The notes under the pieces: model-generated | Seen by the model: the letters and a program-made list of their open reading frames with translations, nothing else | The model's database searches: none | Told to the model about the DNA's origin: nothing | Virus record (IMG/VR): IMGVR_UViG_3300042261_002385 | Location: 124,001 to 188,000 of that record | Strand: one strand, 5' to 3' | Length of the DNA stretch: 64,000 bases | Program-made: the position numbers and the translations under genes | Shown: positions 10,369 to 54,031 of the stretch, piece by piece | Layout: each line of letters opens with the position of its first letter | How positions within the stretch are numbered: position 1 is the stretch's first letter

Positions 10369-12891
10369 TTATTGGTTTATATTTATAATTGTTAACACAT
10401 CATTCTCATCATAATAAGATAATCTATCTAATCCATTTGAATTTTTAAAAATATTACAACTATAATCTTCATAGACAGATGGAGTTCCTGAAACAGAAAG
10501 AACAGTCAATGTCAAATCAGTTTCACCACCAAAAGAAGCAGAAGCTATTGTAAGAGTATCATTAACAGAAAATCCAATTCCTGACGCACTGATAATAACC
10601 TGTGAGACAACACCGGATGAAACTTGTACATCAAAATATGAGTTTATACCAGAACCACCTGTTGCACCAACCGCCAAGTGTAATGTGTCAGGTGAAGCCG
10701 TGGCCGAGCTCCAAGTTATTGACGTGACTGTATTGTAATATGTAAGAAAATTATATTCATTAAGATTGTGAATTTTTACATCATTGTTTCTAAAATAGTC
10801 ACCAATTTCGTTGCCATTGAAAAGATCTTGAATAAAATTATTATAAAAATATTCCCCTACTGTATTTTGATTAAAATAGTTACCAATGATGTTACCAAAC
10901 GATTGAGCTCCACCATATCCGAAGTCATTCTGAATATTATTGTTGTTAAAATAATTACCAATTTTATTAAATGCAAAATTGTTAGCTAAAGTATTACTAT
11001 AAAAATTATCACCGATGGTATTAGAGAAAAAGTCATTACCAATATTATTATCATAAAAATAAGAACTTATTATATTTTTCTCAAAATTATCACCTATAGT
11101 ATTATAAATAGATTCACATCCAATTATGTTTTGATGTATGTTATTACCTAAATCATTATATGAAAAATTTTCTCCAAATTCATTACCAGTGGTATGACCA
11201 AAGAAAAGATTGCCTTTGACATTAGATTTACAAGAATTTTGTCTGAAATCATTAGCTCCATAGTTTTCAAAATCTCCTACAATATTATCATTGAAGTTAA
11301 ATCCAATTTCATTTCTGTAAAAGAAATTATAAATATCATTACTCACAAAATCATTAAAAATTTTGTTTTCATAGAAATCTCTATAAATATTGTTGTTTTC
11401 AAATCCATTACCAATATGATTTTCATAAAATTGAACTTCTCCAAAGTTTGCAATATCACCTATGATATTATTATAAAAGTAATCTCCTATCTTATTGTCT
11501 CTAGTAGTAGAGTAAAATTTATTAGCATTTCCTCCATTACCAAGAGTATTAGACTCAAACTCTCCACGAATTTCATTATTATTAAAACCAACACCAATAA
11601 TATTTTTTAAGAAACCATCAGAAAGAGTATTTATAATATTATTATTAAAGCCATTTCCAATTATATTATTTTGAAAGTCTTGTCCTGAGATTTTATTATT
11701 ATCAAATTGATTATTAATTCTATTTCTATAGAAACTACCAACAGTAATAATATTATCATTAAAATCTTCACCAACTGAGTTTCTTTGAAAATTAGCAGTT
11801 ATAATATTTCTTTGAAAATAATTTCCTATCTGATTCTGGTCAAAGTCATCATCTGTGATATTATGAGAAAAGAAATTACCTATTGTGTTATTGCTACAAT
11901 CATCATCAAAAGTGTTATTGTAACAATTATTTCCGAATCTGTTATTATAATAAGAACCATCTAAGAAAACGTTGTTTGATAATACAAAATTTCCTATACC
12001 GTCCTGTAGGTAAGAATTAGCATGATCCCCGATGTAATTATTAAAAGCAGTAACACCATCAAAAGTTCTAATATTATAGGATTCACTATCAACATTGGTC
12101 TTTTTAGGACTACCGAAGTTCATTATATAGTTGGCAGAATAGTATTTTATATCATTAGCAGTAACATCCCAAACTGAACCAGTCAATGACATGGCGGTAG
12201 CACTTGTTATTGTATCAATTTTAAAAACCTCTTCACTAAAGTATGGTAAAGCAATTACATCACCTTCTGAAAAGTTTGTGAAAACAGTATCAACACCAGT
12301 GACTATACCACCTACTACACTAACTGTTCCTGCCTGTGGATTATTTATATCATATAAATAATAATCATATCTCTTAAAATAAACTTCTCTATGGTCATAG
12401 TCAGTTCTATTATTCCACTCATCTATTCTTTCTGTAATTCTACCATATGCTGTTCCACCGGTATGCTCAGACTGAGTAAACGATATATCATATTTGATTG
12501 AATCTTTCGGAAAATCAGGCTGATATGCATCAATAGACAGAGCCGTGGCACTTATAGCCATCACAATAATTGAATGTGTACTACCGACTTTGTAACTATC
12601 TTCACTGTGAGTTGGATTTCCATAAATGTCATAATCTGGTTGGTCATAACAAGTTTTAAAATCCGATATTTCATAAAATCTACCAGGAACTAAATTTTCT
12701 GAAGTCACTAAACTAAGTAATGAGAAATATGTCACTATTGAATATGAACTAGAACCCCCTCCAGTATTGTTAGTATTTCCATTTTCATCTTTTTGACTGA
12801 AATTAGGCCCATCAAAACCAATATATTTAAATCCTGCTGGTGGGTTTGGCAAAGATGCGAAATCTGTCTCTTGAAAAATTAATCTTCTCAT
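10369..12891 (-). CDS. Putative tailspike/receptor-binding protein with Asn-rich parallel beta-helix repeats
   Basis: Dozens of ~10-11 aa N-x-I-G-x-x-F-x-x repeats (e.g. NNTIGNFFSHN, SNTIGDNFYSN); late-type promoter 12915-12925. Confidence 0.65.
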   Translation of the reverse strand: MRRLIFQETDFASLPNPPAGFKYIGFDGPNFSQKDENGNTNNTGGGSSSYSIVTYFSLLSLVTSENLVPGRFYEISDFKTCYDQPDYDIYGNPTHSEDSYKVGSTHSIIVMAISATALSIDAYQPDFPKDSIKYDISFTQSEHTGGTAYGRITERIDEWNNRTDYDHREVYFKRYDYYLYDINNPQAGTVSVVGGIVTGVDTVFTNFSEGDVIALPYFSEEVFKIDTITSATAMSLTGSVWDVTANDIKYYSANYIMNFGSPKKTNVDSESYNIRTFDGVTAFNNYIGDHANSYLQDGIGNFVLSNNVFLDGSYYNNRFGNNCYNNTFDDDCSNNTIGNFFSHNITDDDFDQNQIGNYFQRNIITANFQRNSVGEDFNDNIITVGSFYRNRINNQFDNNKISGQDFQNNIIGNGFNNNIINTLSDGFLKNIIGVGFNNNEIRGEFESNTLGNGGNANKFYSTTRDNKIGDYFYNNIIGDIANFGEVQFYENHIGNGFENNNIYRDFYENKIFNDFVSNDIYNFFYRNEIGFNFNDNIVGDFENYGANDFRQNSCKSNVKGNLFFGHTTGNEFGENFSYNDLGNNIHQNIIGCESIYNTIGDNFEKNIISSYFYDNNIGNDFFSNTIGDNFYSNTLANNFAFNKIGNYFNNNNIQNDFGYGGAQSFGNIIGNYFNQNTVGEYFYNNFIQDLFNGNEIGDYFRNNDVKIHNLNEYNFLTYYNTVTSITWSSATASPDTLHLAVGATGGSGINSYFDVQVSSGVVSQVIISASGIGFSVNDTLTIASASFGGETDLTLTVLSVSGTPSVYEDYSCNIFKNSNGLDRLSYYDENDVLTIININQ

Positions 12892-14101: not shown

Positions 14102-16831
14102 TCAACTAAATGGATTTATCTGACCTAATACTTGACTCCAAGTAGCAGAAGTTCTTAAAAATGTGAATCCAACTACATCAACTTTATTAGCAGAGGCAGA
14201 ATAAGTTCCACCAGCCCATTTAACACTCTGTGTGACTCCCTCAATATGAACAATTGTTGGTGAGTAAGCTGTAGCTCCTTGGCTAATAATAATAGTAGCT
14301 GTGACCGCTCTGTTATTAGTTGTTGGAACATTGACAAATTTAGCTGTGTAATTAGTTGAAGCCGTTCCGTGATACCAAATCGAACCTAAAGTGAAATCAT
14401 AAACAACATTAGATGCTGTAGCACCTGTTGGTTCTGAGCCGATAACTTCTATGACTTCAGCCAACTCAGATAAACCTGTAGATGAGAATGTGGCAGTAAG
14501 AGTCAAACTGTCACCTACTGATGTTCCACTTGTTCCAGCAGTACCAGAAGTGCCATTTGTTCCAGAAGTACCATTAATTCCAGAACTACCACTTGTGCCA
14601 GAAGTTCCTGCCTCACCACTTGTTCCAGAGGTTCCGGTCGTTCCGGATTCACCACTAGTGCCAGAAGTTCCAGTAGTGCCAGAAGTTCCAGACTCACCAG
14701 TAGTCCCAGAGGTTCCCGATTCACCGCTTGTGCCAGAAGTTCCAGTGGTTCCAGATTCTCCACTTGTTCCAGACGTTCCAGTAGTTCCTGCCTCACCACT
14801 TGTGCCAGAAGTTCCTGCCTCACCACTTGTGCCAGAAGTTCCTGCCTCACCACTTGTGCCAGAGGTTCCTGTATCACCACTTGTTCCGGACGTTCCAGAT
14901 TCCCCGCTTGTTCCAGACGTTCCAGTAGTTCCAGATGTTCCTGCCTCACCACTTGTGCCAGAGGTTCCCGTATCACCACTTGTTCCGGACGTTCCAGATT
15001 CCCCGCTTGTTCCAGACGTTCCAGTAGTTCCAGTAGTTCCAGATGTTCCTGCCTCACCACTTGTTCCAGAAGTTCCATTATCACCGGAAGTTCCGGATGT
15101 TCCTGTATCACCACTTGTTCCGGATGTTCCTGTATCACCACTTGTGCCAGAGGTTCCAAGACCACTACTTCCAGAGGTTCCATTTAAACCACTAGAACCA
15201 GAGGTTCCAGTAGAACCATCTATTCCATTGACACCACTTAGTCCGCTTGTTCCGCTTGAACCAGAGGTTCCTCGAGTACCGGAAGTTCCGGAAGTTCCAA
15301 CCGTTCCAGATACACCACTAGAACCAGAGGTTCCTCGAGTTCCAGAAGTTCCGGAAGTTCCTAAACCAGAAGTACCACTAGAACCAGCAGATCCGGATGT
15401 TCCAGACGTGCCACTAGCACCTGACGAACCAGAAGAGCCACTGCTACCCGAAGTTCCGGAGGTTCCGGAAGTTCCTTTAGTTCCGCTAGTTCCAGATGTG
15501 CCATTATCACCTGAACTACCAGATGTTCCGTTGATACCTGAGCTACCGGATGTTCCGGAAGAACCATTAAGACCAGCGGGTCCTTGAATGGCTCCCATAT
15601 CAACCCAACCATCAGCATTTGAGGCGGCTGACGTTGGATCATATATGTATAGATGACTAGTATCTTGTAAGATATATGTATCTAAAAGATTTGGTTGTGG
15701 TATAGAATAGGATGTTCCTCTACTTTGAGTTAGTGATGAGTATGATGCTTCTACACCCTGTGGACTTAAAGTCTGACCAGGTATACCCTGTGCACCAGAT
15801 GTTCCAGAAGTGGCGGAAGTTCCACTTGTTCCAGATGAACCTCCACCAGAAGTTCCAGATGAACCGCTAGTTCCAGATGAACCGCTAGTTCCAGTTTCAC
15901 CACTAGAACCTGATGACCCACTAGATCCAGATGACCCACTAGACCCAGATGAACCCGAACTGCCGGATTCACCACTTGTGCCGTTTTGACCAGAAGTTCC
16001 GCTTGAACCCGAAGAACCAGTTTCGCCAGAAGTTCCAGATTCACCAGAACTTCCACTTGAGCCAGAAGAACCGGAAGTTCCGTATTCTCCTGAAGTTCCC
16101 GATGTTCCATCAACACCTGATGAGCCAGCATCACCTTCTGCGCCACTTATACCAGAAGTTCCGGAAGTTCCGGTCACTCCGGAGCTTCCTGAGCTACCAC
16201 TTGTTCCAGTTGTTCCACTTTGACCAGAACTTCCAGAAGTGCCATTTGTGCCGTTTACACCTGATGAACCACTTGTTCCAGTTTCACCGGAACTACCACT
16301 TGTTCCAGTTGTTCCACTTTGACCAGAACTTCCAGAAGTGCCACTAGATCCTGACGATCCACTAGACCCTGAAGAACCCGAAGCACCGGACACACCTGAA
16401 GTTCCTGACGTTCCACTTGTGGTGCTAGAACTACCACCAGCAAAAGCTGTACCGTTAATTATCAAAGATGATGTATCAGAAGATAAAATAAATGGTTGAG
16501 ATTCACTACCAAGATTGATGCTATTCATCATAACAGAATTTCCATCTGTTGATATAGTGACACCACCTATATAGATTGTATTACCAGAAACATGAAGACT
16601 CTTCCATCTCAAACTAGATGTTCCCAAATCATATTGAGAGTCAACATCCGGTAAAACATGACCTGAGACGACTGTATTACTTGAAAGTATGCTAAATGTT
16701 GGAGAAGTCACTTCGGTAAACTGAAATGGAACTCCAGCTACCCAACCTCTTCCATTCCATTTGTATCTTACACCTTGAGCATTTACATAAACGTCTCCAA
16801 CATTCGGGTTATTTGGCCAATTTGTATTCAC
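14102..16831 (-). CDS. Collagen-like (Gly-Thr/Ser-Ser) fibre protein
   Basis: N-term WPNNPNVGDVY..YKWNGRGW and HVLPDVDSQYDLGTSSLRWKSLHV fibre-type domains; two long G-X-Y tracts (GTS/GSS/GES); C-terminal beta domain (YDFTLGSIWYH...VKWAGG). Confidence 0.75.
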   Translation of the reverse strand: MNTNWPNNPNVGDVYVNAQGVRYKWNGRGWVAGVPFQFTEVTSPTFSILSSNTVVSGHVLPDVDSQYDLGTSSLRWKSLHVSGNTIYIGGVTISTDGNSVMMNSINLGSESQPFILSSDTSSLIINGTAFAGGSSSTTSGTSGTSGVSGASGSSGSSGSSGSSGTSGSSGQSGTTGTSGSSGETGTSGSSGVNGTNGTSGSSGQSGTTGTSGSSGSSGVTGTSGTSGISGAEGDAGSSGVDGTSGTSGEYGTSGSSGSSGSSGESGTSGETGSSGSSGTSGQNGTSGESGSSGSSGSSGSSGSSGSSGSSGETGTSGSSGTSGSSGTSGGGSSGTSGTSATSGTSGAQGIPGQTLSPQGVEASYSSLTQSRGTSYSIPQPNLLDTYILQDTSHLYIYDPTSAASNADGWVDMGAIQGPAGLNGSSGTSGSSGINGTSGSSGDNGTSGTSGTKGTSGTSGTSGSSGSSGSSGASGTSGTSGSAGSSGTSGLGTSGTSGTRGTSGSSGVSGTVGTSGTSGTRGTSGSSGTSGLSGVNGIDGSTGTSGSSGLNGTSGSSGLGTSGTSGDTGTSGTSGDTGTSGTSGDNGTSGTSGEAGTSGTTGTTGTSGTSGESGTSGTSGDTGTSGTSGEAGTSGTTGTSGTSGESGTSGTSGDTGTSGTSGEAGTSGTSGEAGTSGTSGEAGTTGTSGTSGESGTTGTSGTSGESGTSGTTGESGTSGTTGTSGTSGESGTTGTSGTSGEAGTSGTSGSSGINGTSGTNGTSGTAGTSGTSVGDSLTLTATFSSTGLSELAEVIEVIGSEPTGATASNVVYDFTLGSIWYHGTASTNYTAKFVNVPTTNNRAVTATIIISQGATAYSPTIVHIEGVTQSVKWAGGTYSASANKVDVVGFTFLRTSATWSQVLGQINPFS
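14510..16440 (-). repeat. Gly-X-Y (GTS/GSS) coding repeat tracts, ~14510-15585 and ~15775-16440
   Basis: 9-nt periodic, GC-richer sequence (e.g. ccacttgtgccagaagtt units) standing out from the AT-rich background; boundaries approximate. Confidence 0.85.
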
Positions 16832-16847
16832 TATTCATTTCTTATTT

Positions 16848-18479
16848 TTATATTACTCCATATACTCTTAAGCTATCTACTGTCCAAGTTCCACCAGAAG
16901 AACTTGTAGTTGTTATTGTTATAGTGGCTCCAGCAGCTATAGCCTCTGAATACTTTAAATTTCTACCAACATCATGTTGGTCAGATGTTCCAGTAGCATC
17001 GAGTCTAACTATTTTACTTCTTTTATTAACACCACCAACGACTATATTGAATGTTACTGTGGCATTAGTATTAGCATTAGTAAACAGACCACACTCTGAT
17101 TCAATTATAATTTTTGAATATGCATTTGCAGCTAAAGTATAGCTAAAAGCTGTAGTGTTTGTGCTACCACTCACCGGAGTTTCGTTTGCACTTAATAACA
17201 TAACTGTGCCAGAAGCTGGACTTAAACCTGAAGTTCCGGATGTTCCGGTGGTTCCTTGAGCACCTGAGGATCCACTTGTTCCTGATGTTCCTCTTGTTCC
17301 TCTTGTTCCTGATGTGCCATTCACACCACTGCTACCGGATGTTCCTGAGGTGCCACTGGAACCTAAGAAGTTCCCATCTACCCCAGAGGTTCCACTAGTA
17401 CCTATAGTTCCAGAAGTTCCACTGGTTCCTCTAGTTCCAGAAGTTCCCATAGTTCCTCTTGTTCCAGATGTGCCGTTTACACCAGAAGAGCCAGATGTTC
17501 CTCTTGTTCCACTTGTTCCTGATGTTCCGGTGCTTCCGGAAGTTCCAGAAGTGCCATTAACACCAGAAGTTCCACTGGTTCCTCTTGTTCCTGATGATCC
17601 ACTTGTTCCAGAGGTTCCTCTAGTTCCAGAGGTTCCGTTAACTCCGCTAGTTCCTGATGTTCCATTAATACCACTAGTTCCTGAGGTCCCTGATGTTCCA
17701 TCACCACCAGCAGCTCCATCAAGATTGACAACCCAATTTGAGTACGAAGATGAACCATATTTAGCCAATACTTCATATACTAACTCACCAGTAGAAGAAT
17801 TATAGCTTTCTACCTGACCTTCTATATAATTTGATGCATCATAAGATATTATTATTAATTGAGCGGCACTATATGATAAAGAAGGATCTACAGTAATACT
17901 ATATGTTGATGAAACAGCTGTAGTTGATAAATCAATAGCTGAGTTATATTCTACTCTAAATGAATCACCATCATAACCTGATGTTCCTGAAGTTCCAGCT
18001 GGACCTGTTCCACCAATAGGTCCAATTTCACCTACTGCAGTAACCCATTGATAATAGTCACCGTCATAAATATAGGTGTATAAGTTACCATATTCAGCAT
18101 CATACCAAAAAGAACCTGTTTTAATTTGACTTGTTCCAGTGCCTGTGGGTGTAGTTGATTGATAAAAGAATTTAGCAGATACAGCTGTTATGTAATTTTT
18201 AATTTCGTTGTTTATAAAAATTGGTGAGTTTTGTTGTAAAGTGTCTATCAGTTGTTTGATTCTTGGTAGTCCGAGTTTAGCTTCGTTATTAGAAGAAAAC
18301 GGAATATTTATCAATCTTTGACTTTTAAGACTGATAACAACCATATTGTTTTTTACATAAAGATTTATTACTGTAAATGGATTGACGGTGTATGTGACTA
18401 CTCCAGTATTATCCATTATTTGAATATTCGTATCGTTTGTTCCTAAAGGTCTTAAAAATTTATCCCAACTATAACTCAT
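16848..18479 (-). CDS. Second collagen-like (GTS/GTR) virion protein
   Basis: G-X-Y tract ~17215-17710 (GTSGTRGTSG...), GSFWYDAEYGNLYTYIYDG fibre-type domain. Confidence 0.7.
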   Translation of the reverse strand: MSYSWDKFLRPLGTNDTNIQIMDNTGVVTYTVNPFTVINLYVKNNMVVISLKSQRLINIPFSSNNEAKLGLPRIKQLIDTLQQNSPIFINNEIKNYITAVSAKFFYQSTTPTGTGTSQIKTGSFWYDAEYGNLYTYIYDGDYYQWVTAVGEIGPIGGTGPAGTSGTSGYDGDSFRVEYNSAIDLSTTAVSSTYSITVDPSLSYSAAQLIIISYDASNYIEGQVESYNSSTGELVYEVLAKYGSSSYSNWVVNLDGAAGGDGTSGTSGTSGINGTSGTSGVNGTSGTRGTSGTSGSSGTRGTSGTSGVNGTSGTSGSTGTSGTSGTRGTSGSSGVNGTSGTRGTMGTSGTRGTSGTSGTIGTSGTSGVDGNFLGSSGTSGTSGSSGVNGTSGTRGTRGTSGTSGSSGAQGTTGTSGTSGLSPASGTVMLLSANETPVSGSTNTTAFSYTLAANAYSKIIIESECGLFTNANTNATVTFNIVVGGVNKRSKIVRLDATGTSDQHDVGRNLKYSEAIAAGATITITTTSSSGGTWTVDSLRVYGVI

Positions 18480-30754: not shown

Positions 30755-30967
30755 ATGCAGTTTATTGTAGAATTTAAGTCTTTTTATAAAGTAGGTGATG
30801 TAGTCAAAATTGAATACTGGTGGGATGATATGATCACACCTGTAAAAGTTATTGAACAAACATCACCAAGAACAATCAAAGTTACTCATAATATTCCAGA
30901 ATCTAAAATTCAAAATGCTCCTGATGAAATCATTAGCACTTCAGATATTATAGATATTGCTAGATAA
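30755..30967 (+). CDS. Small SH3-like hypothetical protein
   Basis: YKVGDVVKIEYW; TTTAATATATA at 30738-30748; N-term MQFIVEFKSF. Confidence 0.55.
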   Translation: MQFIVEFKSFYKVGDVVKIEYWWDDMITPVKVIEQTSPRTIKVTHNIPESKIQNAPDEIISTSDIIDIAR

Positions 30968-32159
30968 TCTCACCTTTTCCATCTTCATACATTTTATCTA
31001 AAAGATAATCATAGAAGAATTTATCATATTCAAGATTCATATCTAAATATTGTTCTTTAATTATTTGTAACTCCCAATATTCTAAATTAGAATCGGTGAA
31101 CTTACTCATAATCCAATCATACTTAGGATCTTTATTCGAAACCGAATCAATGTTTATAATATTAGAAATTGGCTTGATGTCATAAAAATCATCATATTGG
31201 TCATAAGCATATGACATATCCATTAAACCGGAACCACTGTCGTAATATTTTTTACCACTTCTTCGATTTCTCTTCTTCTTTTTACCTCTGTTTGAGTAAA
31301 TTTCAGACATACTATCACCATATCCGACACTATCATCATATTGACCATAGTCATATGTTTCATATCCATAATCTTTACGACCGTAGGTAGGGTAAGAATA
31401 ATCTTTCCATTCGTGAACCTCAGGATTACGTTTTGTAGGAAGACTTTCCCAATTAACTTTTACACAAGCTTCAGCCAAATCTGTTAAGTGAAGAATATCT
31501 TGAGACTCATTAGTAGTATGTTCTTTGTAATAACCAACAGAAACATTAGTACACTCTGGAATTAAGTGAGTAAACTCAGCAGAGTCGGTATAAACACCAC
31601 CTGTATCTTTTTTATAAGACAAACTACGAGTCTGATTTAATTCTTGACACAGTGCGTCAGCGAAATCATCAGAACAACAACGAGAAGAAGATTGATAAGT
31701 AATAATAGAAGATACATCACGTCGGTCAAAAGAAATGATGCGGTCATAATTTCCTTTGAAGAATCCGAATTTAGCGGCATTTCCCGAACCAATACATCCA
31801 ACTTCCTCACCAATGAAGAAATAGTAAAGACCTGGAACTTCATTTTTAATCATCCAAAGAAGAACTGTGATACCAGCTTTGTCGTCAGCTCCTAAAGTAG
31901 TTTTACCATCAGTTTTGATTAAATTCTGGTCAAAAACGTGAGTTACTGTGACATAGTCTTTTGATACCGTATCTAGGTGAGCTGCGAAAATTGAACGACT
32001 TTCACCAATTTTATAAAAGTAGTTTCCCCACTCGTCTTTTTGCATACCTTTTGGAAACAACTCTCTCATTGATGCTACGAGTTGGTCCTCGTGTCCATAA
32101 GGAACTGTTTTAGAGGTTAATCTTAAAAATGTTTCAAATACAAATTCTTCTACTTTCAT
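30960..32159 (-). CDS. M20/M28/M42-clan zinc peptidase
   Basis: AHLDTV, LGADDKAG, GEEVGCIGS, ISFDR, YTDSAEF, NVSVGYYKEHT; Tyr/Asp/Gly-rich C-terminal half. Confidence 0.8.
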   Translation of the reverse strand: MKVEEFVFETFLRLTSKTVPYGHEDQLVASMRELFPKGMQKDEWGNYFYKIGESRSIFAAHLDTVSKDYVTVTHVFDQNLIKTDGKTTLGADDKAGITVLLWMIKNEVPGLYYFFIGEEVGCIGSGNAAKFGFFKGNYDRIISFDRRDVSSIITYQSSSRCCSDDFADALCQELNQTRSLSYKKDTGGVYTDSAEFTHLIPECTNVSVGYYKEHTTNESQDILHLTDLAEACVKVNWESLPTKRNPEVHEWKDYSYPTYGRKDYGYETYDYGQYDDSVGYGDSMSEIYSNRGKKKKRNRRSGKKYYDSGSGLMDMSYAYDQYDDFYDIKPISNIINIDSVSNKDPKYDWIMSKFTDSNLEYWELQIIKEQYLDMNLEYDKFFYDYLLDKMYEDGKGEII

Positions 32160-35596: not shown

Positions 35597-36166
35597 TTAC
35601 ATATTCAAATATTCCTTTAATTTCATTAACATATAGTCTGTAATTAAATCAGATGAGTTTACTGAATTAATGAACTTAATATCTACTTTGACGGATTTAC
35701 TAATCTTCTCTTCTTCAGAACCATCCCCTTTCGGTATTACTTCGTGGTAGTCTCTTTCGTTTAAAGGTAGAATAAAAGGGTGATATCTATTAGTATGACC
35801 TTTACTAATATAAAGAGGTTTATACTCTTCTTCAATTTGAAAATCCTCTCTTAAAACAATTCCAGCTTCTTCTTCTAATTCTCTTAAAAGAGCCATTTTC
35901 GGTGTCTCACCTGTTTCAATTCCACCACCAACAACAGTTGCATGGAATTCCTGACTATCTACATACTTAAATGTTGGAATATATTCATATCTTAAAACCA
36001 TTTGATTTGATTCAATTAAGTAAGGAATACAAACAACACAATCTTTTTCTTTAATAAGTGACCAGTCTTCATATTTGACGACCTTCATTTTATCATCTTG
36101 ATAAAGGATTTCATCATCTGGTTCAGTGAATTCGTTTTTTGGTTTAAGTTTTGAGAATTTTTCCAT
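35597..36166 (-). CDS. Nudix hydrolase
   Basis: Nudix box GGGIETGETPKMALLRELEEEAGI; ATTAATATATA at 36171-36181. Confidence 0.88.
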   Translation of the reverse strand: MEKFSKLKPKNEFTEPDDEILYQDDKMKVVKYEDWSLIKEKDCVVCIPYLIESNQMVLRYEYIPTFKYVDSQEFHATVVGGGIETGETPKMALLRELEEEAGIVLREDFQIEEEYKPLYISKGHTNRYHPFILPLNERDYHEVIPKGDGSEEEKISKSVKVDIKFINSVNSSDLITDYMLMKLKEYLNM

Positions 36167-36169
36167 AAA

Positions 36170-37366
36170 TTATATATTAATTTCTGGTTTAATAAAATTA
36201 TTGTTTTGTATACAAAGTTTAATCTTTTCAATAACCATTTCGGATGATATTTCAGTTGAACACTCATAATTTTTATTTCTTGGGCAATATGACCAACCAT
36301 TTTGACTATGATTTGGAACAGTTATATCATTCCAACAAGAATTACAAACATTAGGATTGAAGACTCTATATGGATTTGAAAACTCACTGTTTGGATTTGA
36401 AAAACCTGAAATCATAACAACTGGTTTATTGAGAGCCCAAGCTAACCATGAAAGACCAGAACCAAGACCAATAAAAAAATCACAATGAATTAAGTCCGTA
36501 ATTCTTTCTTGTAATGGAAAATCACCAGTTTTATTAACAACTCTATTGGGTGCTGAGTTGACAATTCCATCTTTTCCGAAATTGTCATTTTTATCTATAC
36601 ACAAAACATCATAACCTATTGATACTAAATAGTCAACAACTTCTTGCCAACCAGTTTTATTGTTCCAATATTTATACTGTGCCGTGCTTTGAACTCCAAT
36701 ACAAACATATGGTTTTTGATGGAACCTATCAGTGTTCTCAACAAATATATTTGGTCTTTCTTCAACATAATCCATACCCAACATATCAGAAGCAACTTTA
36801 GAAAGAGTTACCGTTCTAAGACTTGGAATTCGAGAGTAGAAACCTAAATCAAAACTAGCATAATAACAATGACATGGTGTATAAAAACAAAAGAATTTTC
36901 TACAAGAACTATTTTTTAGACCAGGAATTATTGTATTATCACCTCTATCTGGATTTGGTTCAACATCAGTAAATGAAATATCAGTATAGACATTTTCAAA
37001 CAAGTCTTTGAATGCGCAACTAACATATAATTCACATTTATGAAGTTTTTGAAATCTATCTACTTGAGCCATCCATGCAATACAATCACCTAAAGCGTGG
37101 CTATCAAAATTCAATTTAACTTTTTTTCCTTCTAAATTCATTTCATCAGAAAAAATTAAATTATCTTCAAAATATACTTTTACTTGATATTTTGTGAATT
37201 TATAATTGATAGAGTGAGGATCGTAACTAGTCAAACTCTCATTTGTAACAACATTTAAAAGTTCAGTCTTACCATCAGTGATTATTATGTTATATGACCT
37301 CCAATTAGGACAAATGATTTGAATATGACAACCATCGCAATAACTAACTGTAATTTTTGGACTCAT
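36170..37366 (-). CDS. Autotransporter O-heptosyltransferase-like (TibC/Aah, GT9-like) glycosyltransferase
   Basis: ALGDCIAW, KPYVCIGVQSTAQYKYWNN..GWQEVVDYL, FFIGLGSGLSWLAWA, PVVMISGFS, and Cys cluster CNSCWND...CPR...EC. Confidence 0.82.
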   Translation of the reverse strand: MSPKITVSYCDGCHIQIICPNWRSYNIIITDGKTELLNVVTNESLTSYDPHSINYKFTKYQVKVYFEDNLIFSDEMNLEGKKVKLNFDSHALGDCIAWMAQVDRFQKLHKCELYVSCAFKDLFENVYTDISFTDVEPNPDRGDNTIIPGLKNSSCRKFFCFYTPCHCYYASFDLGFYSRIPSLRTVTLSKVASDMLGMDYVEERPNIFVENTDRFHQKPYVCIGVQSTAQYKYWNNKTGWQEVVDYLVSIGYDVLCIDKNDNFGKDGIVNSAPNRVVNKTGDFPLQERITDLIHCDFFIGLGSGLSWLAWALNKPVVMISGFSNPNSEFSNPYRVFNPNVCNSCWNDITVPNHSQNGWSYCPRNKNYECSTEISSEMVIEKIKLCIQNNNFIKPEINI

Positions 37367-37396
37367 TACAATTATATACTAATAAATGATACAGGT

Positions 37397-38035
37397 TTAG
37401 TATTTATAGTTCTTAGTAGATTTACGACACTTAATTTGACTTTTCACATTATTCATTTCTGAACTACCAAACTCAAGTCTAGCATTTTTTCTTTTCATTA
37501 CTAAGCCTTCAATCATATCAATTGGTGTTAGTTGATTGAAAAGATCGTAGAATCCATTAAGATAAGATTTGACTCGTAATACATTTTCAGAAACTGTGAA
37601 TAAGTAATCTTTTTCTGAATTAATTTGACCATAAAGCTGGTCTAAAAGACTGACTCTTTCTTCAAATGTTTTACCAACTAAATATTCGCCATCAAAGCAT
37701 AGAATATCAAAAATTACAAACTTATGATTGAATGGTTGACTAGTTTCATCCAATTTTGATTTATTGAGATATTCGCCATTAAGTATCATCCATCCACCAT
37801 TTCCTCTATAAAGAGACTTGACTTCTTCATCGGTCAGTCTAAAATTAGTTAGTCTTTGATTGTGACGGTTCATCACGATAAATTTAAGACCATTTGTAAA
37901 AATCAAACAGTTAGAACCATTGAGTTTTGGCTGTGCTAAAAGACTATCATTGTCCCAGAAGTTTAAATCATCCGGCGATATAGCATTTTTAGGTCGAGGA
38001 GGATAAATATAACGATAGTTTATATATTTTGGCAT
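37397..38035 (-). CDS. ATP-dependent ligase, adenylation domain only (RNA or DNA ligase)
   Basis: QPKLNGSN (motif I, Lys intact), LNGEY (III), FVIFDIL (IIIa), IEGLVMK (IV), KCRK (V); 212 aa. Confidence 0.8.
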   Translation of the reverse strand: MPKYINYRYIYPPRPKNAISPDDLNFWDNDSLLAQPKLNGSNCLIFTNGLKFIVMNRHNQRLTNFRLTDEEVKSLYRGNGGWMILNGEYLNKSKLDETSQPFNHKFVIFDILCFDGEYLVGKTFEERVSLLDQLYGQINSEKDYLFTVSENVLRVKSYLNGFYDLFNQLTPIDMIEGLVMKRKNARLEFGSSEMNNVKSQIKCRKSTKNYKY

Positions 38036-38071: not shown

Positions 38072-38091
38072 TTTGTAAAATAAATTTTTAG

Positions 38092-38162
38092 AGGTTGGGG
38101 ATAGAATTTCACTACCGTAATGGACTTTGCGAGTCCACGCCTAAATACTCAGCCACCCAACC
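38092..38162 (-). tRNA. trnC: tRNA-Cys(GCA), non-canonical
   Basis: GGTTGGG/CCCAACC acceptor stem, D arm GCTGAGTATTTAGGC, anticodon arm TGGAC-TCGCAAA-GTCCA, T arm GGTAG-TGAAATT-CTATC, discriminator U73; CCA not encoded. Confidence 0.8.
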
Positions 38163-41673: not shown

Positions 41674-41858
41674 ACACCTAAATTTTTTTTATATATTCTT
41701 TTTATTTTCAAAACTCTACTTTGTATTTTAAAAAACTTATTTTTTTTATTTATCATTTCATCATAAAGAGAAATACTTACACCACCCATACCATAAGAAG
41801 AGTTTATTTGCATCTTTAACAACATCAATTCATTCCTTAGTTTATTCATGATGGTCAA
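41670..41858 (-). CDS. Hypothetical protein
   Basis: 62 aa; ends SRVLKIKRIYKK. Confidence 0.5.
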   Translation of the reverse strand: MTIMNKLRNELMLLKMQINSSYGMGGVSISLYDEMINKKNKFFKIQSRVLKIKRIYKKNLGV

Positions 41859-42441
41859 TTTGATGAATTTCTCTTTTTTCCATAATTCTCATAATATCTC
41901 CTATATTAAAAGGTCGATATTCTCCAAAAATTCTATAAGCTACATCTACTCCGACATCCATAGAACGACCGTAATCAGGAATTGAACCGTGACTGTGTCC
42001 ATAAAGATGAATTACTCCTTTGTGACTTCCATTCCAAACTCTATGTGAATAGTGTGAAAGGAATAACTCAGTTTTTCCTAAACTAAGATGTAAAACATCT
42101 TGAACAGATGAAAAAAGGTCGATGGGATTAAAAGTAGTGTCGTGAAATTTTACTTCTTTGTCAACAATATGTTGGTCGTGATTTCCTAAAATAAGATGTA
42201 TATTCTGACAAACAATTGAGTCTCTGAACAATTTGATATTATGTATGCCTCCAAAACTCCAGTCTCCTAAATGATAAAGTATATCGTCTTCTTTTACATA
42301 GCGGTTGATACCATCAACTAAAGCTTGGTTCATTTCCCAAACAGAATTAAAGTTTCGATAACCTCTTTGCCAACGAGAAACACCGGGTCCGGCTATATTT
42401 GTATGGCCATAGTGAGTGTCTGATGTTATCCATATATTCAT
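41842..42441 (-). CDS. Calcineurin-like metallophosphoesterase
   Basis: SDTHYGH, HLGDW, LILGNHD, SHY, HLYGHSH; TATATTTG box at 42446-42453, 4 nt before ATG. Confidence 0.88.
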   Translation of the reverse strand: MNIWITSDTHYGHTNIAGPGVSRWQRGYRNFNSVWEMNQALVDGINRYVKEDDILYHLGDWSFGGIHNIKLFRDSIVCQNIHLILGNHDQHIVDKEVKFHDTTFNPIDLFSSVQDVLHLSLGKTELFLSHYSHRVWNGSHKGVIHLYGHSHGSIPDYGRSMDVGVDVAYRIFGEYRPFNIGDIMRIMEKREIHQIDHHE

Positions 42442-46482: not shown

Positions 46483-46934
46483 ATTGAAATAAAATATAAT
46501 TTATAAAAAAGTATTGAGTAGAAAATTATATTCAAAGTTCCATAAATTGGCCACAAATGTAATCTATGACCAAAAAAAATACTTAAAACATCAATTAAAA
46601 TTATTGAACCAACAAAGAGAGGAAAAATCCAGTAAATTTTTTTAAAACTTTTTGAAACAATATAATTGTGAAATTTATATTTCCATTTTAGATACGGATT
46701 TTGTAGTTGAGATATTTTGATTTCTCTATCACAAGATTTACAAAGAATTTTAAAGTCTTTAAGATCAAGAATCCTTGATAGTAGGACACCATCTACCAAG
46801 TCAATTTCTTCTTTACAGTTGTAACAAACTTGTCCTTTTCGAATATTCCACTCTAAGTTTTTTCTCCTATTTGAATAAAACATAAGAATAAAAAACAATA
46901 GTATTGGAAGTAAGCAATAAATTAAACTAAACAT
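46464..46934 (-). CDS. Membrane protein with Zn-finger (CYNC...CKSC)
   Basis: N-terminal TM, two CxxC, two C-terminal TM helices. Confidence 0.6.
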   Translation of the reverse strand: MFSLIYCLLPILLFFILMFYSNRRKNLEWNIRKGQVCYNCKEEIDLVDGVLLSRILDLKDFKILCKSCDREIKISQLQNPYLKWKYKFHNYIVSKSFKKIYWIFPLFVGSIILIDVLSIFFGHRLHLWPIYGTLNIIFYSILFYKLYFISIKKPSE

Positions 46935-47389
46935 TAAGCTAAAATTAATTCTAAGAATTTATCTCTTTTTTCAGATTTAGAGAGTTTTTTTATACAATCT
47001 GGACCAATTCCGGACAAAATTGAAGTTGGAACTGTCAATCGCTTACCACATTTTCCACAAAACCCTTCGTGCCAAACTTCTAAAAAATCACTTACACTGT
47101 CATTGATTAGATTCTTCAACATATAGGTAAAAACTTTTACTGATTGTGAATTTTCACTTATCGGTGATTTTTTTCCGTGTTTAAAATTTCCCTGTATACA
47201 AGTTCCAATATATGTATACTGGTCAGGACCAGTAAGAACACTCACAAAAAATAGATTAGAATCTTTAGCTTGTTTTATTTTGTAAGTAAATCTATTACTT
47301 GTTTGAGTATTCAAAAAAGTAACAACTGATTTACCAGAAAACATAAATTTGAGAGCATCTTTTGAGTTAGAAATTTTGTGACCGTTCAT
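46934..47389 (-). CDS. DUF6011-like Zn-ribbon protein (start revised to 47389)
   Basis: CGKCGKRLTVPTSILSGIGPDC; TTTG-N19-TATATTTG promoter at 47407-47437 lies within the longer ORF call. Confidence 0.65.
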   Translation of the reverse strand: MNGHKISNSKDALKFMFSGKSVVTFLNTQTSNRFTYKIKQAKDSNLFFVSVLTGPDQYTYIGTCIQGNFKHGKKSPISENSQSVKVFTYMLKNLINDSVSDFLEVWHEGFCGKCGKRLTVPTSILSGIGPDCIKKLSKSEKRDKFLELILA

Positions 47390-53659: not shown

Positions 53660-54031
53660 TTATTTTTCAAAATAAGAATCAATCTTTTCTTTTTCTTCTT
53701 TAGAAACTTCTGTGTAGATTCTCTCAAATCTATCCATCACTTCTTTTGCTGCGGCTAATGGAGCATCTTCTTCAGATGGAATTTCTGTTGGGGTAATTCC
53801 TGGACGAGTTGGTCTTGGAATTGTAGTTGGAGCCGGAGTTGTAGTCGGAGATGGTTTTGTCTCTGTTCCAGCCAACGGAGCATCTTCTTCTGACGGAATT
53901 TCTGTTGGTGTGATTCCTGGACGAGTTGGTCTTGGAATTGTAGTTGGAGCCGGAGTCGTAGTTGGAGATGGTTTTGTTTCCGTCATCACAAACTCTTCGA
54001 CAAATCTCTGATATTTTTTGATATAACCCAT
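53660..54031 (-). CDS. Pro/Thr-rich CTS-like protein with internal duplication
   Basis: Starts MGYIKKYQRFVEE; TTTAATATATA at 54051-54061. Confidence 0.65.
   Translation of the reverse strand: MGYIKKYQRFVEEFVMTETKPSPTTTPAPTTIPRPTRPGITPTEIPSEEDAPLAGTETKPSPTTTPAPTTIPRPTRPGITPTEIPSEEDAPLAAAKEVMDRFERIYTEVSKEEKEKIDSYFEK
53760..53983 (-). repeat. 117-bp-period tandem duplication (TETKPSPTTTPAPTTIPRPTRPGITPTEIPSEEDAPLA x2)
   Basis: Copies begin at 53760 and 53877; peptide identical, about 8 nucleotide differences, all silent. Confidence 0.92.

What the first reader, a model, noticed from the sequence alone, without database searches (positions are those of the whole stretch)
36170..37366. Phage-encoded TibC/Aah-type protein O-glycosyltransferase with in-window Ser/Thr-rich candidate substrates
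Seen: a complete BAHT-like signature including the CxxC...CPR...C cluster, behind a late-type promoter variant (37373-37383). The same window encodes two fibres with hundreds of Ser/Thr in G-T-S repeats and a Thr/Pro mucin-like protein. Established: TibC/Aah heptosylate Ser residues of autotransporters using ADP-heptose, and virion glycosylation is known in some actinophages. Inference: late glycosylation of virion fibres (shielding, stability, host range). The adjacent Nudix hydrolase could trim the NDP-sugar pool.
Basis: partly seen in the sequence, partly recalled or inferred. Interest (0 to 1): 0.64.

Follow-up and report, generated by a model that had tools for sequence, protein, structure and literature searches.

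The report
Phage TibC-like fibre glycosyltransferase
A 436-kb freshwater phage carries two genes of the TibC/Aah family, enzymes that bacteria use to coat adhesins with heptose sugar. In many phages such genes sit right beside giant serine-rich collagen-like fibre genes, so these fibres are probably sugar-coated, a link I could not find in the literature.

Summary
ORF 36170-37366 (-) is a full-length BAHT (TibC/Aah-type protein O-heptosyltransferase). It scores 307 bits on TIGR04414 (cut-off 200) and its model has TM 0.80-0.84 to TibC. The catalytic Asp, the four donor-binding residues and the four iron-binding Cys are all present.

The window lies in a 436-kb T4-like huge phage from freshwater.

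New findings outside the window:
- A second BAHT, fused to a GT8-like domain, sits in an operon with an FkbM methyltransferase protein and a GT1/GT25 protein. This operon lies between the head genes and two giant (G-[ST]-S)n collagen-like proteins (1695 and 3055 aa).
- At least five phage BAHT lineages, including the sister group of the window gene's clade, lie directly beside such collagen-like genes.
- 7 of 120 viral stretches picked only by a (G-[ST]-S)4 DNA pattern hold a BAHT, against 0 of 118 (G-[AP]-Q)4 controls.

The fibre-glycosylation idea is therefore supported as guilt by association, but mainly for the paralog. The window gene belongs to a stand-alone clade with an extra Cys4 insert. 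That clade's conserved neighbours are a Nudix and a ligase-like gene, not fibres. The role proposed for the Nudix is untested, and the Thr/Pro protein is an unlikely substrate. Nothing has been shown biochemically.

The parts
36170..37366 (-). BAHT1: stand-alone 398-aa TibC/Aah-family protein O-glycosyltransferase. It has an N-terminal beta-barrel, a GT-B catalytic domain and an iron-finger Cys4 (C341/C344/C361/C369). It also carries a clade-specific extra Cys4 insert (C155/C160/C165/C167).
   Evidence: TIGR04414 307 bits against cut-off 200. TibC match at E 4e-62. Fold TM 0.80-0.84 to 4RAP. Residue positions. Conservation of those residues.
37373..37383 (-). Promoter-like motif ATTAGTATATA, a one-mismatch variant of the phage's structural-gene motif TTAATATATA. 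It lies 14 nt before the BAHT1 ATG.
   Evidence: The core AATATATA is upstream of 125 of 506 crudely called genes against about 5 expected. Positional classes are 12-15 and 24-34 nt before the ATG. The motif is present upstream of portal, protease, MCP and fibre genes. A one-mismatch match is weak on its own.
35597..36166 (-). Nudix hydrolase (189 aa) with a canonical Nudix box. It has its own exact TTAATATATAA motif, which lies inside the 3' end of BAHT1. Its adjacency to BAHT1 is conserved in relatives.
   Evidence: PF00293 37 bits. Only weak, sub-threshold hits to MutT, NudE and YffH/AdpP models. PDB hits are limited to the Nudix box. Synteny is kept down to 76% BAHT1 identity.
37397..38035 (-). 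Ligase-like nucleotidyltransferase domain protein (212 aa), directly upstream of BAHT1. It is preceded by a Bacteroidota-type -33 TTTG / -7 TAnnTTTG promoter-like pair, so it is probably in a different (early) expression class.
   Evidence: PF01068 38 bits and PF09414 27 bits. Promoter pattern. Conserved synteny.
14102..16831 (-). Collagen-like tail-fibre-type protein, 909 aa. About 180 G-X-Y triplets in four blocks: X mostly Thr/Ser, Y 73% Ser, no Pro. Candidate acceptor.
   Evidence: Triplet counts. PHROG tail fibre / collagen-like minor tail families at E down to 4e-75, matched mostly through the repeats.
16848..18479 (-). Collagen-like tail-fibre-type protein, 543 aa. About 58 G-X-Y triplets, mostly GTS. 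Candidate acceptor.
53660..54031 (-). It is Ser-poor and therefore an unlikely BAHT acceptor.
   Evidence: T+P is 53% in the best 40-aa window, while Ser reaches at most 7%. TibC/Aah modify Ser, not Thr.
38091..38162 (-). tRNA-Cys (GCA), between the ligase-like gene and the DUF7831 gene. Context only.
   Evidence: ARAGORN.

Best explanation
BAHT1 is an active, phage-encoded member of the TibC/Aah family of cytoplasmic protein O-glycosyltransferases.

Most likely mechanism:
- It is made together with the structural genes.
- It uses host-derived ADP-heptose. All TibC donor-contact residues are kept.
- Asp94 acts as catalytic base, and heptose is transferred onto many Ser residues of the phage's own proline-free collagen-like (G-[ST]-S)n fibre proteins before or during their assembly.

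The genome holds four such proteins with about 980 triplets, and the Y position is about 87% Ser. It also holds a second BAHT, fused to a GT8-like domain and followed by FkbM-methyltransferase and GT1/GT25 proteins. That cluster lies next to the two giant fibres and probably builds and extends the same kind of O-glycan.

Shown: family membership, fold, conserved residues, and the gene-neighbourhood statistics.

Inferred: enzymatic activity, heptose as the sugar, Ser of the collagen-like repeats as acceptor, late timing, and the biological purpose. Possible purposes are stabilising or stiffening a Pro-free triple helix, shielding from proteases, or host recognition.
For: (1) Membership.
- TIGR04414 at 307 bits against 200; TibC at E 4e-62; TM 0.80-0.84 to 4RAP, including the N-terminal barrel.
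- D94, T228, K232, R288, W307 and the Cys4 are all kept. Their roles follow PMC4358343.

(2) Acceptor pool.
- Only the four collagen-like proteins reach 40% Ser or more per 40 aa in the whole proteome.
- Y is Ser in 64-93% of triplets, depending on the protein.
- BAHTs are Ser-specific.

(3) Own genome.
- BAHT2 scores 275 bits.
- It lies in a co-directional run: 3055-aa and 1695-aa collagen-like proteins, three small ORFs, GT1/GT25, FkbM, GT8-like-BAHT2, and then the portal.

(4) Other phages.
- BAHT genes sit 13-420 nt from, and co-directional with, (G[ST]S)n genes in L185, L243, L272, L038 and L056. In L072/L076 the gap is about 0.4-1.3 kb.
- This mirrors the bacterial aah-aidA arrangement.
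- The cultured Microcystis phage Mel-JY01 has the pair as well.

(5) Statistics.
- 7 of 120 stretches chosen only by a (G[ST]S)4 DNA pattern carry a BAHT, against 0 of 118 (G[AP]Q)4 controls (p = 0.014).
- Counting any gene of the cluster gives 10 against 0 (p = 0.0016).

(6) Close relatives (portal 74-92% identical).
- The BAHT island upstream of the portal is present in only 5 of 80 loci.
- All 3 with enough flank also have the collagen-like gene. Only one other locus has one, and that locus is truncated.

(7) Phylogeny.
- The sister group of the BAHT1 clade (P0060/P0067/L437/L438; 98/92 support) is collagen-adjacent wherever context is known.

(8) Expression class.
- The motif class upstream of BAHT1 is that of the portal, protease, MCP and fibre genes.
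Against: - No member of the BAHT1 clade with known context (L409, L410, L411, L431-L436) has a collagen-like gene within the fetched flank of up to 10 kb.
- In the window the nearest fibre gene is about 19 kb away.
- The clade's conserved partners are a Nudix and a ligase-like gene.
- Only about 15-20% of BAHT-centred viral loci show a (G[ST]S)n gene within 10 kb. One BAHT-bearing huge phage (LR756504) gave no hit to the strict DNA pattern, which also missed the collagen-like gene of Mel-JY01, and has no collagen-like ORF within 10 kb of its BAHT. Many phage BAHTs therefore have other or distant substrates.
- Known BAHT acceptors are beta-helix strand-loop-strand motifs, not collagen-like repeats.
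- The phage lacks GmhA and GmhB. It is not known whether the presumed Bacteroidota host makes ADP-heptose.
- The promoter match has a mismatch.
- There are no expression, mass-spectrometry or activity data.
Confidence: 0.55

Rival explanations
1. BAHT1 glycosylates a host protein rather than virion parts. The target could be a surface adhesin, an autotransporter or a gliding/T9SS repeat protein. The effect would be to remodel the cell surface (superinfection exclusion, receptor masking) or to disable a host factor.
For: - All characterised BAHTs act on bacterial surface adhesins (PMC4358343; aah-aidA pairs).
- BAHT1 is not next to any fibre gene, and its clade sits in non-structural neighbourhoods in other huge phages.
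- Phage glycosyltransferases that alter host surfaces are well known (reviewed in the papers read).
Against: - No host is known and no autotransporter-like gene is nearby.
- The motif upstream is the structural-gene type, not the host-type promoter seen on presumably early genes.
- The sister lineage is embedded in collagen-like fibre operons.
- The phage's own proteome offers about 850 Ser acceptors in exactly the repeat type that recurs next to BAHTs.
Confidence: 0.15
2. BAHT1 works with its conserved neighbours (Nudix, ligase-like protein) in a pathway unrelated to fibres. For example, it could modify another phage or host protein or a nucleotide-linked molecule. The Nudix would then hydrolyse an ADP-linked by-product or donor.
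For: - The ligase-like / BAHT1 / Nudix trio is conserved in all close relatives with context, down to 76% BAHT1 identity.
- The Nudix start lies 3 nt from the BAHT1 stop.
- The Nudix gives weak hits to ADP-compound and ADP-sugar hydrolase models NudE and YffH/AdpP.
- The clade-specific Cys4 insert hints at a specialised partner or acceptor.
Against: - The synteny does not extend to more distant clade members at 46-52% identity, so it may simply reflect recent common ancestry.
- The ligase-like gene has a different, host-type promoter pattern.
- The Nudix matches only through the generic Nudix box.
- None of the 80 BAHT-centred viral loci holds a Nudix or ligase homologue.
Confidence: 0.15
3. 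BAHT1 is an LPS or polysaccharide heptosyltransferase (classical GT9 role) that alters host lipopolysaccharide.
For: Pfam places it in GT9 (PF01075). The genome carries many polysaccharide-type glycosyltransferases and a sugar-nucleotide locus.
Against: - WaaC/WaaF/WaaQ models score 16-30 bits against cut-offs of 135-569, whereas the protein-O-heptosyltransferase model scores 307.
- Fold similarity to WaaC/WaaF is TM 0.4-0.5, against 0.8 for TibC.
- The BAHT-specific N-terminal barrel and iron finger are present.
Confidence: 0.05

Closest known systems
TibC / Aah (AAH) / BAHT family of bacterial autotransporter heptosyltransferases (Yao et al. 2014, PMC4358343; PDB 4RAP, 4RB4)
   Same: - 31-40% identical over the full length.
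- Same fold, including the N-terminal beta-barrel.
- Catalytic Asp, donor-binding Thr/Lys/Arg/Trp and the Fe-binding Cys4 are all conserved.
- In other phage lineages the gene sits directly upstream of a long repetitive Ser-rich structural gene. This matches aah upstream of aidA.
   Different: - It is encoded by a phage, and there is no autotransporter anywhere nearby.
- The candidate acceptors are collagen-like G-X-Y repeats, not beta-helix strand-loop-strand repeats.
- TibC Pro300 (Ser in AAH) is Gly302 here.
- The window clade has an extra Cys4 insert, C-x4-C-x4-C-x-C, that is absent from TibC.
- Phage homologues form a clade separate from the three plasmid-borne enterobacterial sequences used as outgroup (100/100 support).
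- Most phage homologues are fused to GT1, GT2, GT8-like or FkbM domains.
Mycobacteriophage virion O-glycosylation (Freeman et al. 2023, PMC10527164, as cited in PMC12619734)
   Same: Phage-encoded glycosyltransferases decorate the phage's own structural proteins. This is the proposed role here too.
   Different: - Those glycosyltransferases belong to other families (from memory), and there the glycans were found at the C-termini of the capsid and tail-tube subunits.
- Here the enzyme is a GT9/BAHT and the proposed acceptors are hundreds of Ser residues in collagen-like fibres.
- Here nothing has been demonstrated experimentally.
Glycosylated collagen-like proteins: Bacillus exosporium BclA (GXT repeats, O-linked rhamnose oligosaccharide), Mimivirus collagen-like fibril proteins, and Riftia cuticle collagen, where Gal on Y-position Thr stabilises the triple helix. 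All three are recalled from memory, not tested here.
   Same: G-X-Y repeats with a hydroxyl amino acid in the Y position that carries O-glycans. The sugar can take the stabilising role of hydroxyproline.
   Different: - The enzymes are different and unrelated.
- The repeats here are Pro-free and Ser-dominated.
- Neither triple-helix formation nor glycosylation has been shown.
LPS heptosyltransferases WaaC/WaaF (GT9)
   Same: Same CAZy-type superfamily (PF01075) and GT-B fold. They use ADP-heptose as donor.
   Different: - Far below the family cut-offs, with TM only 0.4-0.5.
- They lack the N-terminal barrel and the iron finger.
- They act on lipid-linked acceptors, not protein.

Membership tests
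BAHT (TibC/Aah; TIGR04414) | Whole-protein score above the curated equivalog cut-off, with end-to-end coverage | tested here: met
   307.1 bits against 200, model positions 13-372 of 374. The second genomic copy scores 275 bits.
BAHT (TibC/Aah; TIGR04414) | TibC protomer fold: N-terminal beta-barrel, GT-B catalytic domain and inserted modules | tested here: met
   AF2 model with pTM 0.81. Foldseek top hits are 4RAP/4RB4 at TM 0.80-0.84 over about 400 columns, E 1e-32. The insert and part of the iron finger are modelled with low confidence.
BAHT (TibC/Aah; TIGR04414) | Catalytic base Asp (TibC D110) and donor contacts T226, K230, R286, W305 | tested here: met
   D94, T228, K232, R288 and W307 are present. 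D, K and W are invariant in all 75 homologues and T in 73 of 75 (Ser in two). Arg is kept in 6 of 7 members of the BAHT1 clade.
BAHT (TibC/Aah; TIGR04414) | Iron-finger Cys4 (TibC C339/C342/C358/C370) | tested here: met
   C341, C344, C361 and C369 are invariant in all 75 sequences. Metal content itself cannot be tested with these tools.
BAHT (TibC/Aah; TIGR04414) | Beta-hairpin thumb with two hydrophobic tip residues (F265/V266) plus F368, needed for the dodecamer | tested here: inconclusive
   The tip reads G-I-V (I268, V269) and the aromatic before E-C is Y367. A hairpin is predicted at residues 262-271.
BAHT (TibC/Aah; TIGR04414) | Gene adjacent to an autotransporter (AIDA-I/TibA/Ag43-type) substrate gene | tested here: not met
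   The neighbours are a Nudix and a ligase-like gene. Bacterial members sit directly upstream of AIDA-I/autotransporter genes. In other phage lineages the adjacent gene is collagen-like.
BAHT (TibC/Aah; TIGR04414) | Transfers heptose from ADP-heptose to Ser | not testable with these tools
   Only inferred from conserved residues. The phage encodes sub-threshold HldE-kinase-like and adenylyltransferase-like proteins but no GmhA or GmhB.
LPS heptosyltransferases (WaaC, WaaF, WaaQ) | Score above the equivalog cut-offs | tested here: not met
   16-30 bits against cut-offs of 135-569. TM 0.4-0.5.
Collagen-like (G-X-Y)n proteins (the candidate substrates) | Long uninterrupted Gly-X-Y runs | tested here: met
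   Runs of up to 71 triplets (window) and 86 triplets (giant paralogs). Triple-helix formation was not tested. The repeats contain no Pro.
ADP-sugar pyrophosphatase type of Nudix (the neighbouring gene) | Nudix box plus family-specific regions above threshold | tested here: inconclusive
   The Nudix box is present and PF00293 scores 37 bits. NudE and YffH/AdpP score only 21 bits against cut-offs of 80-169. PDB hits cover the box only.

The most novel reading that the evidence does not exclude
Phage BAHTs would define an unreported virion-glycosylation system. In it, ring-forming TibC-like enzymes, often fused to extending glycosyltransferases and methyltransferases, hyper-O-glycosylate the Y-position Ser of proline-free collagen-like (G-[ST]-S)n fibres up to 3000 aa long. 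The sugar would take over the helix-stabilising role that hydroxyproline has in animal collagen. The window's clade would be a specialised stand-alone version with a second Cys4 metal site. The paralog's clade has lost the adenine-reading Arg and may use a different nucleotide sugar.
Probability: 0.35. Interest if true: 0.8.

Novelty: new variant of a known kind. Interest (0 to 1): 0.64.

Why it matters
- BAHTs are known only as virulence-associated modifiers of enterobacterial and Burkholderia autotransporters. Here the family turns out to be abundant in phages: at least 570 IMG/VR contigs and at least 539 metagenome contigs.
- The family is repeatedly wired to a different class of repetitive substrate, Ser-rich collagen-like fibres. 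If confirmed, this would widen the acceptor range of a structurally unusual enzyme family.
- It would also give a first mechanism for how Pro-free collagen-like phage fibres could be stabilised or shielded.
- Virion protein glycosylation would extend from actinophages to huge freshwater and cyanobacterial phages.
- A cultured phage, Microcystis phage Mel-JY01, carries the same gene pair, so the hypothesis can be tested directly.
- It would also correct current annotations. BAHT domains in phages are labelled 'FkbM methyltransferase' or left unnamed, and the Mel-JY01 collagen-like gene is not called at all.

Tried and rejected
- **Complex prediction.** No result either way.
- **The genome search on metagenome contigs.** Whole-genome co-occurrence for the BAHT1 clade could therefore not be measured.
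- **Strict DNA pattern on five phage records.** It found (G[ST]S)4 only in LR756501. It missed the Mel-JY01 collagen-like gene that the protein-level scan found. The pattern under-counts, so I did not use it for absence claims.
- **'Maximum Ser per 100 aa' metric over six-frame ORFs.** It did not separate BAHT loci from controls, because off-frame translations of GC-rich repeats also score high. Dropped.
- **PHROGs.** No family for BAHT1 or BAHT2.
- **Pfam and PHROGs on the other large proteins** of the window's fibre block. Nothing found.
- **ADP-heptose pathway.** No GmhA or GmhB. Only sub-threshold HldE-domain-like proteins. I rejected the idea that the phage makes its own ADP-heptose from scratch.
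- **Nudix as ADP-sugar hydrolase.** Left unresolved.
- **Thr/Pro protein as BAHT acceptor.** Rejected because it is Ser-poor.
- **Literature.** No paper in the searchable library links BAHT or heptosyltransferase with phages or with collagen-like proteins. That library is incomplete.
Full report
**1. What is at the coordinates**

The minus strand of 36170-37366 holds a 398-aa ORF with an ATG start.
- Pfam places it only in GT9 (40 bits).
- The NCBIfam equivalog model for Aah/TibC, TIGR04414, scores 307.1 bits against a cut-off of 200. E is 1.5e-91 and coverage is end to end. The LPS heptosyltransferase models stay at 16-30 bits against cut-offs of 135-569.
- phmmer against PDB sequences finds only TibC (4RAP, 4RB4; E 4e-62).
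- An AlphaFold2 model built on a 13-sequence alignment (pLDDT 78, pTM 0.81) has TibC chains as its first 20 or so fold matches (TM 0.80-0.84, E 1e-32). WaaC and WaaF reach only TM 0.4-0.5.

The residues that Yao et al. (PMC4358343) showed to matter are present:
- catalytic base D110 corresponds to D94;
- beta-phosphate contacts T226/K230 correspond to T228/K232;
- adenine contact R286 corresponds to R288;
- heptose contact W305 corresponds to W307;
- Fe ligands C339/C342/C358/C370 correspond to C341/C344/C361/C369.

In 75 non-redundant homologues, D, K, W and the four Cys are invariant and the Thr is kept in 73 (Ser in two). The stereoselectivity position (TibC P300, AAH S294) is Gly302.

**2. 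Where the window lies**

- The window is bases 124001-188000 of a 436,265-bp virus record, estimated 95% complete and labelled 'provirus' by IMG/VR.
- The genome encodes a T4-type portal (PF07230, E 5e-59), a head maturation protease and a major head protein.
- It has weak DNA similarity to the huge phages of the LR7452xx/LR7565xx series.
- Near-identical DNA occurs in freshwater, lake, estuary and lagoon metagenomes from 16 studies.

Two promoter-like classes stand out.
- The core AATATATA of the motif TTAATATATA precedes 125 of 506 crudely called genes, against about 5 expected. It lies 12-15 or 24-34 nt before the ATG. It precedes the portal, protease, major head protein (one mismatch), fibre genes and the Nudix.
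- A -33 TTTG / -7 TAnnTTTG pair lies 12 nt before the ATG of other genes, including the ligase-like gene just upstream of BAHT1. From memory this is the Bacteroidota sigma-A consensus, which hints at the host phylum.

BAHT1 has ATTAGTATATA 14 nt before its ATG. This is a one-mismatch variant in the right place. 'Late-type' is thus reasonable, but weak for this gene alone.

**3. The candidate acceptors**

- The 'G-T-S fibres' are collagen-like G-X-Y proteins: 909 aa (14102-16831) and 543 aa (16848-18479). X is mostly Thr or Ser, Y is 64-73% Ser, and there is no Pro.
- They hit PHROG tail-fibre and collagen-like minor-tail families, largely through the repeats.
- Genome-wide, exactly four proteins have long G-X-Y runs, and only those four reach 40% Ser per 40 residues.
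- The other two are giants of 1695 and 3055 aa outside the window, with Y = Ser in 91-93% of triplets.
- The Thr/Pro protein (53660-54031) is Ser-poor. Since TibC and Aah modify Ser and not Thr, it is a poor candidate.

**4. A second BAHT and a glycosylation operon next to the giant fibres**

TIGR04414 finds a second copy at G000:278601-279659 (275 bits). It is the C-terminal half of a 770-aa protein. The N-terminal half has a DxD motif and resembles viral GT8-domain clusters (atlas score 0.92).

The co-directional gene order, in the direction of transcription, is:
- 3055-aa collagen-like protein;
- 1695-aa collagen-like protein;
- three small ORFs;
- 549-aa GT1+GT25 protein;
- 524-aa FkbM methyltransferase protein;
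- GT8-like-BAHT2 fusion;
- a nucleotidyltransferase-like protein and two unknowns;
- portal;
- further on, the protease and the major head protein.

The two BAHTs are only 31% identical. A third glycan locus at G000:16-27 kb holds:
- an epimerase/dehydratase;
- three glycosyltransferases;
- a PfkB kinase whose best hit is HldE domain I (94 bits against 345);
- E1 alpha/beta TPP enzymes;
- a Zn-dependent alcohol dehydrogenase;
- another FkbM protein.

A 140-aa nucleotidyltransferase elsewhere has HldE domain II as its best hit (74 bits against 181). GmhA and GmhB are absent.

**5. Comparative test of the BAHT / collagen-like link**

(a) *Abundance.* At least 570 IMG/VR contigs and at least 539 JGI metagenome contigs encode BAHT relatives.

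(b) *BAHT-centred loci.*
- Of the best 80 IMG/VR loci, 16 have a G-X-Y ORF within 10 kb, and 12 of those are of the (G[ST]S) type.
- After collapsing at 90% identity this is 7 of 49 clusters.
- In the metagenome set it is 16 of 80.
- 65 of the 80 IMG/VR loci also carry a GT1/GT25 homologue and 28 an FkbM homologue. None carries a Nudix or ligase homologue.

(c) *Reverse test.*
- 120 viral stretches (1.10 Mb) were picked solely by a DNA pattern encoding (G-[ST]-S)4. Seven non-redundant ones contain a BAHT, and three more contain another gene of the cluster.
- 118 stretches (1.11 Mb) picked by a (G-[AP]-Q)4 pattern contain none.
- Fisher p = 0.014 for BAHT and p = 0.0016 for any cluster gene.

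(d) *Geometry.* The BAHT ORF and the collagen-like ORF are co-directional and 13-420 nt apart in L185, L243 (flanked on both sides), L272, L038 and L056; in L072/L076 the gap is about 0.4-1.3 kb. This is the arrangement of aah upstream of aidA on E. coli and Salmonella plasmids.

(e) *Close relatives.*
- 80 loci were centred on portals 74-92% identical to this phage's portal. The BAHT island upstream of the portal is present in only five.
- The three with enough flank all have a (G[ST]S)n ORF just beyond it.
- Of the others, only one truncated locus has a small one.
- These five loci represent about two lineages, so I treat this as supporting evidence, not as a statistic.

(f) *A cultured phage.* In Microcystis phage Mel-JY01, the BAHT domain ends a 1226-aa protein annotated 'methyltransferase FkbM'. 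A 1016-aa open frame of (G[ST]S)n lies 1.7 kb upstream on the same strand. It is not annotated, and minus-strand 'hypothetical' CDSs are called over it.

**6. Phylogeny, and what it means for the window gene**

- In a careful ML tree (43 sequences), the three plasmid-borne enterobacterial autotransporter BAHTs used as outgroup form one clade and the phage sequences form the other side (100/100).
- A 9-member phage clade is entirely collagen-adjacent (100/98). It includes BAHT2, Mel-JY01 and LR756501.
- The L072/L056 pair is also collagen-adjacent, as are scattered members elsewhere.
- The window's BAHT1 falls in a separate clade of stand-alone proteins of about 395 aa (100/99). The clade is defined by a C-x4-C-x4-C-x-C insert (C155/C160/C165/C167) that no other sequence has.
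- No member of this clade with known context has a collagen-like gene within the fetched flank of up to 10 kb.
- Close relatives keep the ligase-like / BAHT1 / Nudix order down to 76% BAHT1 identity. More distant members do not.
- The sister group (P0060, P0067, L437, L438; 98/92) sits in a run of collagen-like gene, glycosyltransferase/methyltransferase gene and BAHT wherever context is known.

The link to collagen-like proteins is therefore strong for the paralog and for the nearest outgroup. For BAHT1 itself it is indirect.

A further difference concerns the donor:
- The adenine-contacting Arg is kept in BAHT1 and most phage BAHTs.
- It is replaced by Val/Thr/Leu/Ile in the BAHT2 clade and the Mel-JY01 pair.
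- TibC R286A is inactive or strongly impaired.
- ADP-heptose is thus the parsimonious donor for BAHT1, but it is less certain for BAHT2.

**7. Mechanism proposed**

Shown:
- A complete BAHT with intact catalytic and donor-binding residues.
- A structural-gene-type motif upstream (with one mismatch).
- A proteome whose only Ser-rich proteins are four collagen-like fibres.
- A recurrent, specific and operon-like association of phage BAHTs with such fibres.

Inferred:
- BAHT1 acts in the cytoplasm late in infection.
- It takes ADP-heptose from the host pool, perhaps topped up by the phage's HldE-like kinase and adenylyltransferase.
- It heptosylates Ser in the G-[ST]-S repeats.
- The BAHT2 operon primes, extends and methylates glycans on the giant fibres.

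From memory, O-glycans on Y-position Thr stabilise the triple helix in Riftia cuticle collagen, and BclA's GXT repeats are O-glycosylated. A Pro-free (G-[ST]-S)n helix may need such help. TibC's ring threads a rod-like repetitive substrate, which would also suit a collagen-like chain. The oligomeric state could not be tested.

**8. Rivals**

- A host-protein target, an unrelated pathway with the Nudix and ligase-like neighbours, and LPS heptosylation are set out in the Rival explanations section.
- The first two cannot be excluded for BAHT1. LPS heptosylation is disfavoured.
- The Nudix has a canonical box but no assignable specificity.

**9. Novelty**

- IMG's automatic annotation already names some metagenomic homologues 'autotransporter strand-loop-strand O-heptosyltransferase'.
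- I found no paper in the searchable library connecting BAHTs with phages or with collagen-like proteins.
- Virion glycosylation is documented for mycobacteriophages with other enzymes (cited in PMC12619734).
- I rate the finding a new variant of a known kind: a known enzyme family in a new carrier with a probable new substrate class.

Noticed in passing
outside the window: G000:278553-300200 (loci L007, L008): A second BAHT, fused to a GT8-like domain, lies in an operon with an FkbM protein and a GT1/GT25 protein. The operon sits between the portal/head module and two giant (G-[ST]-S)n collagen-like proteins of 1695 and 3055 aa.
   Followed up: yes
outside the window: G000:16000-27000 (L407) and G000:46193-46615 (L006/L408): A sugar-nucleotide/glycan locus holds an epimerase/dehydratase, three glycosyltransferases, an HldE-domain-I-like PfkB kinase, TPP-dependent E1 alpha/beta, a Zn-dependent alcohol dehydrogenase and an FkbM protein. 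A separate small HldE-domain-II-like nucleotidyltransferase lies elsewhere. All are below equivalog cut-offs. GmhA and GmhB are absent.
   Followed up: partly
window, e.g. upstream of 37397-38035, 30960-32159, 41842-42441 and 46934-47389: A -33 TTTG / -7 TAnnTTTG pair lies about 12 nt before the ATG of a subset of genes. From memory this is the Bacteroidota sigma-A promoter consensus. It suggests a Bacteroidota host and an early gene class distinct from the TTAATATATA class.
   Followed up: partly
window 36170-37366, residues 154-167: A C-x4-C-x4-C-x-C insert is invariant in the BAHT1 clade and absent from TibC, BAHT2 and all 68 other homologues compared. It may be a second metal site. It is modelled with low confidence (pLDDT 41-59).
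   Followed up: partly
L007:12554-13720 (BAHT2 domain) and its clade: The Arg that reads the adenine of ADP-heptose in TibC (R286) is Val/Thr/Leu/Ile in the collagen-adjacent BAHT2 clade and in Mel-JY01. It is kept in almost all other BAHTs. The nucleotide-sugar donor may differ in that clade.
   Followed up: partly
L413 = PP395634.1 (Microcystis phage Mel-JY01) 2-3049 (+): A 1016-aa open frame of (G[ST]S)n collagen-like repeats is not annotated. Minus-strand 'hypothetical protein' CDSs are called over it, and the record start cuts it. The BAHT domain downstream is hidden inside a 1226-aa 'methyltransferase FkbM'.
   Followed up: partly
window 14451-15587 (+) and other ORFs overlapping 14102-18479: Long open frames, such as a 378-aa 'PEVP' repeat, lie on the opposite strand of the GTS repeats. 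They look like by-products of the repeat's codon structure rather than genes.
   Followed up: no
window 10369-12891 (-): An 840-aa protein has dozens of Asn-rich repeats of about 11 residues (N-x-I-G-x-x-F type), suggesting a beta-helix/solenoid fibre. It follows an exact late-type motif and has no Pfam or PHROG match.
   Followed up: no
L410:11165-11839 (ENA 258-kb contig): In a distant member of the BAHT1 clade, the gene next to the BAHT is a 2OG-Fe(II) oxygenase of the PF13640 type, a prolyl-hydroxylase-like family. This is curious next to an enzyme suspected of modifying collagen-like proteins.
   Followed up: no
L016/L018:1107-3741 and L011-L013:2-1252: Some BAHT-centred viral loci that lack G-X-Y genes carry other Ser-rich repeat ORFs on the same strand, of the (P-S)n and poly-S/T types. 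These may be alternative acceptors.
   Followed up: no
whole record G000: IMG/VR labels this 436-kb record 'provirus'. Yet it has a T4-like head module, two phage-specific promoter classes and no obvious host flank in the regions read. The label may be wrong.
   Followed up: no
window 38091-38162 (-): The only tRNA in the window is tRNA-Cys. It lies two genes upstream of BAHT1, which has 18 Cys (4.5%).
   Followed up: no
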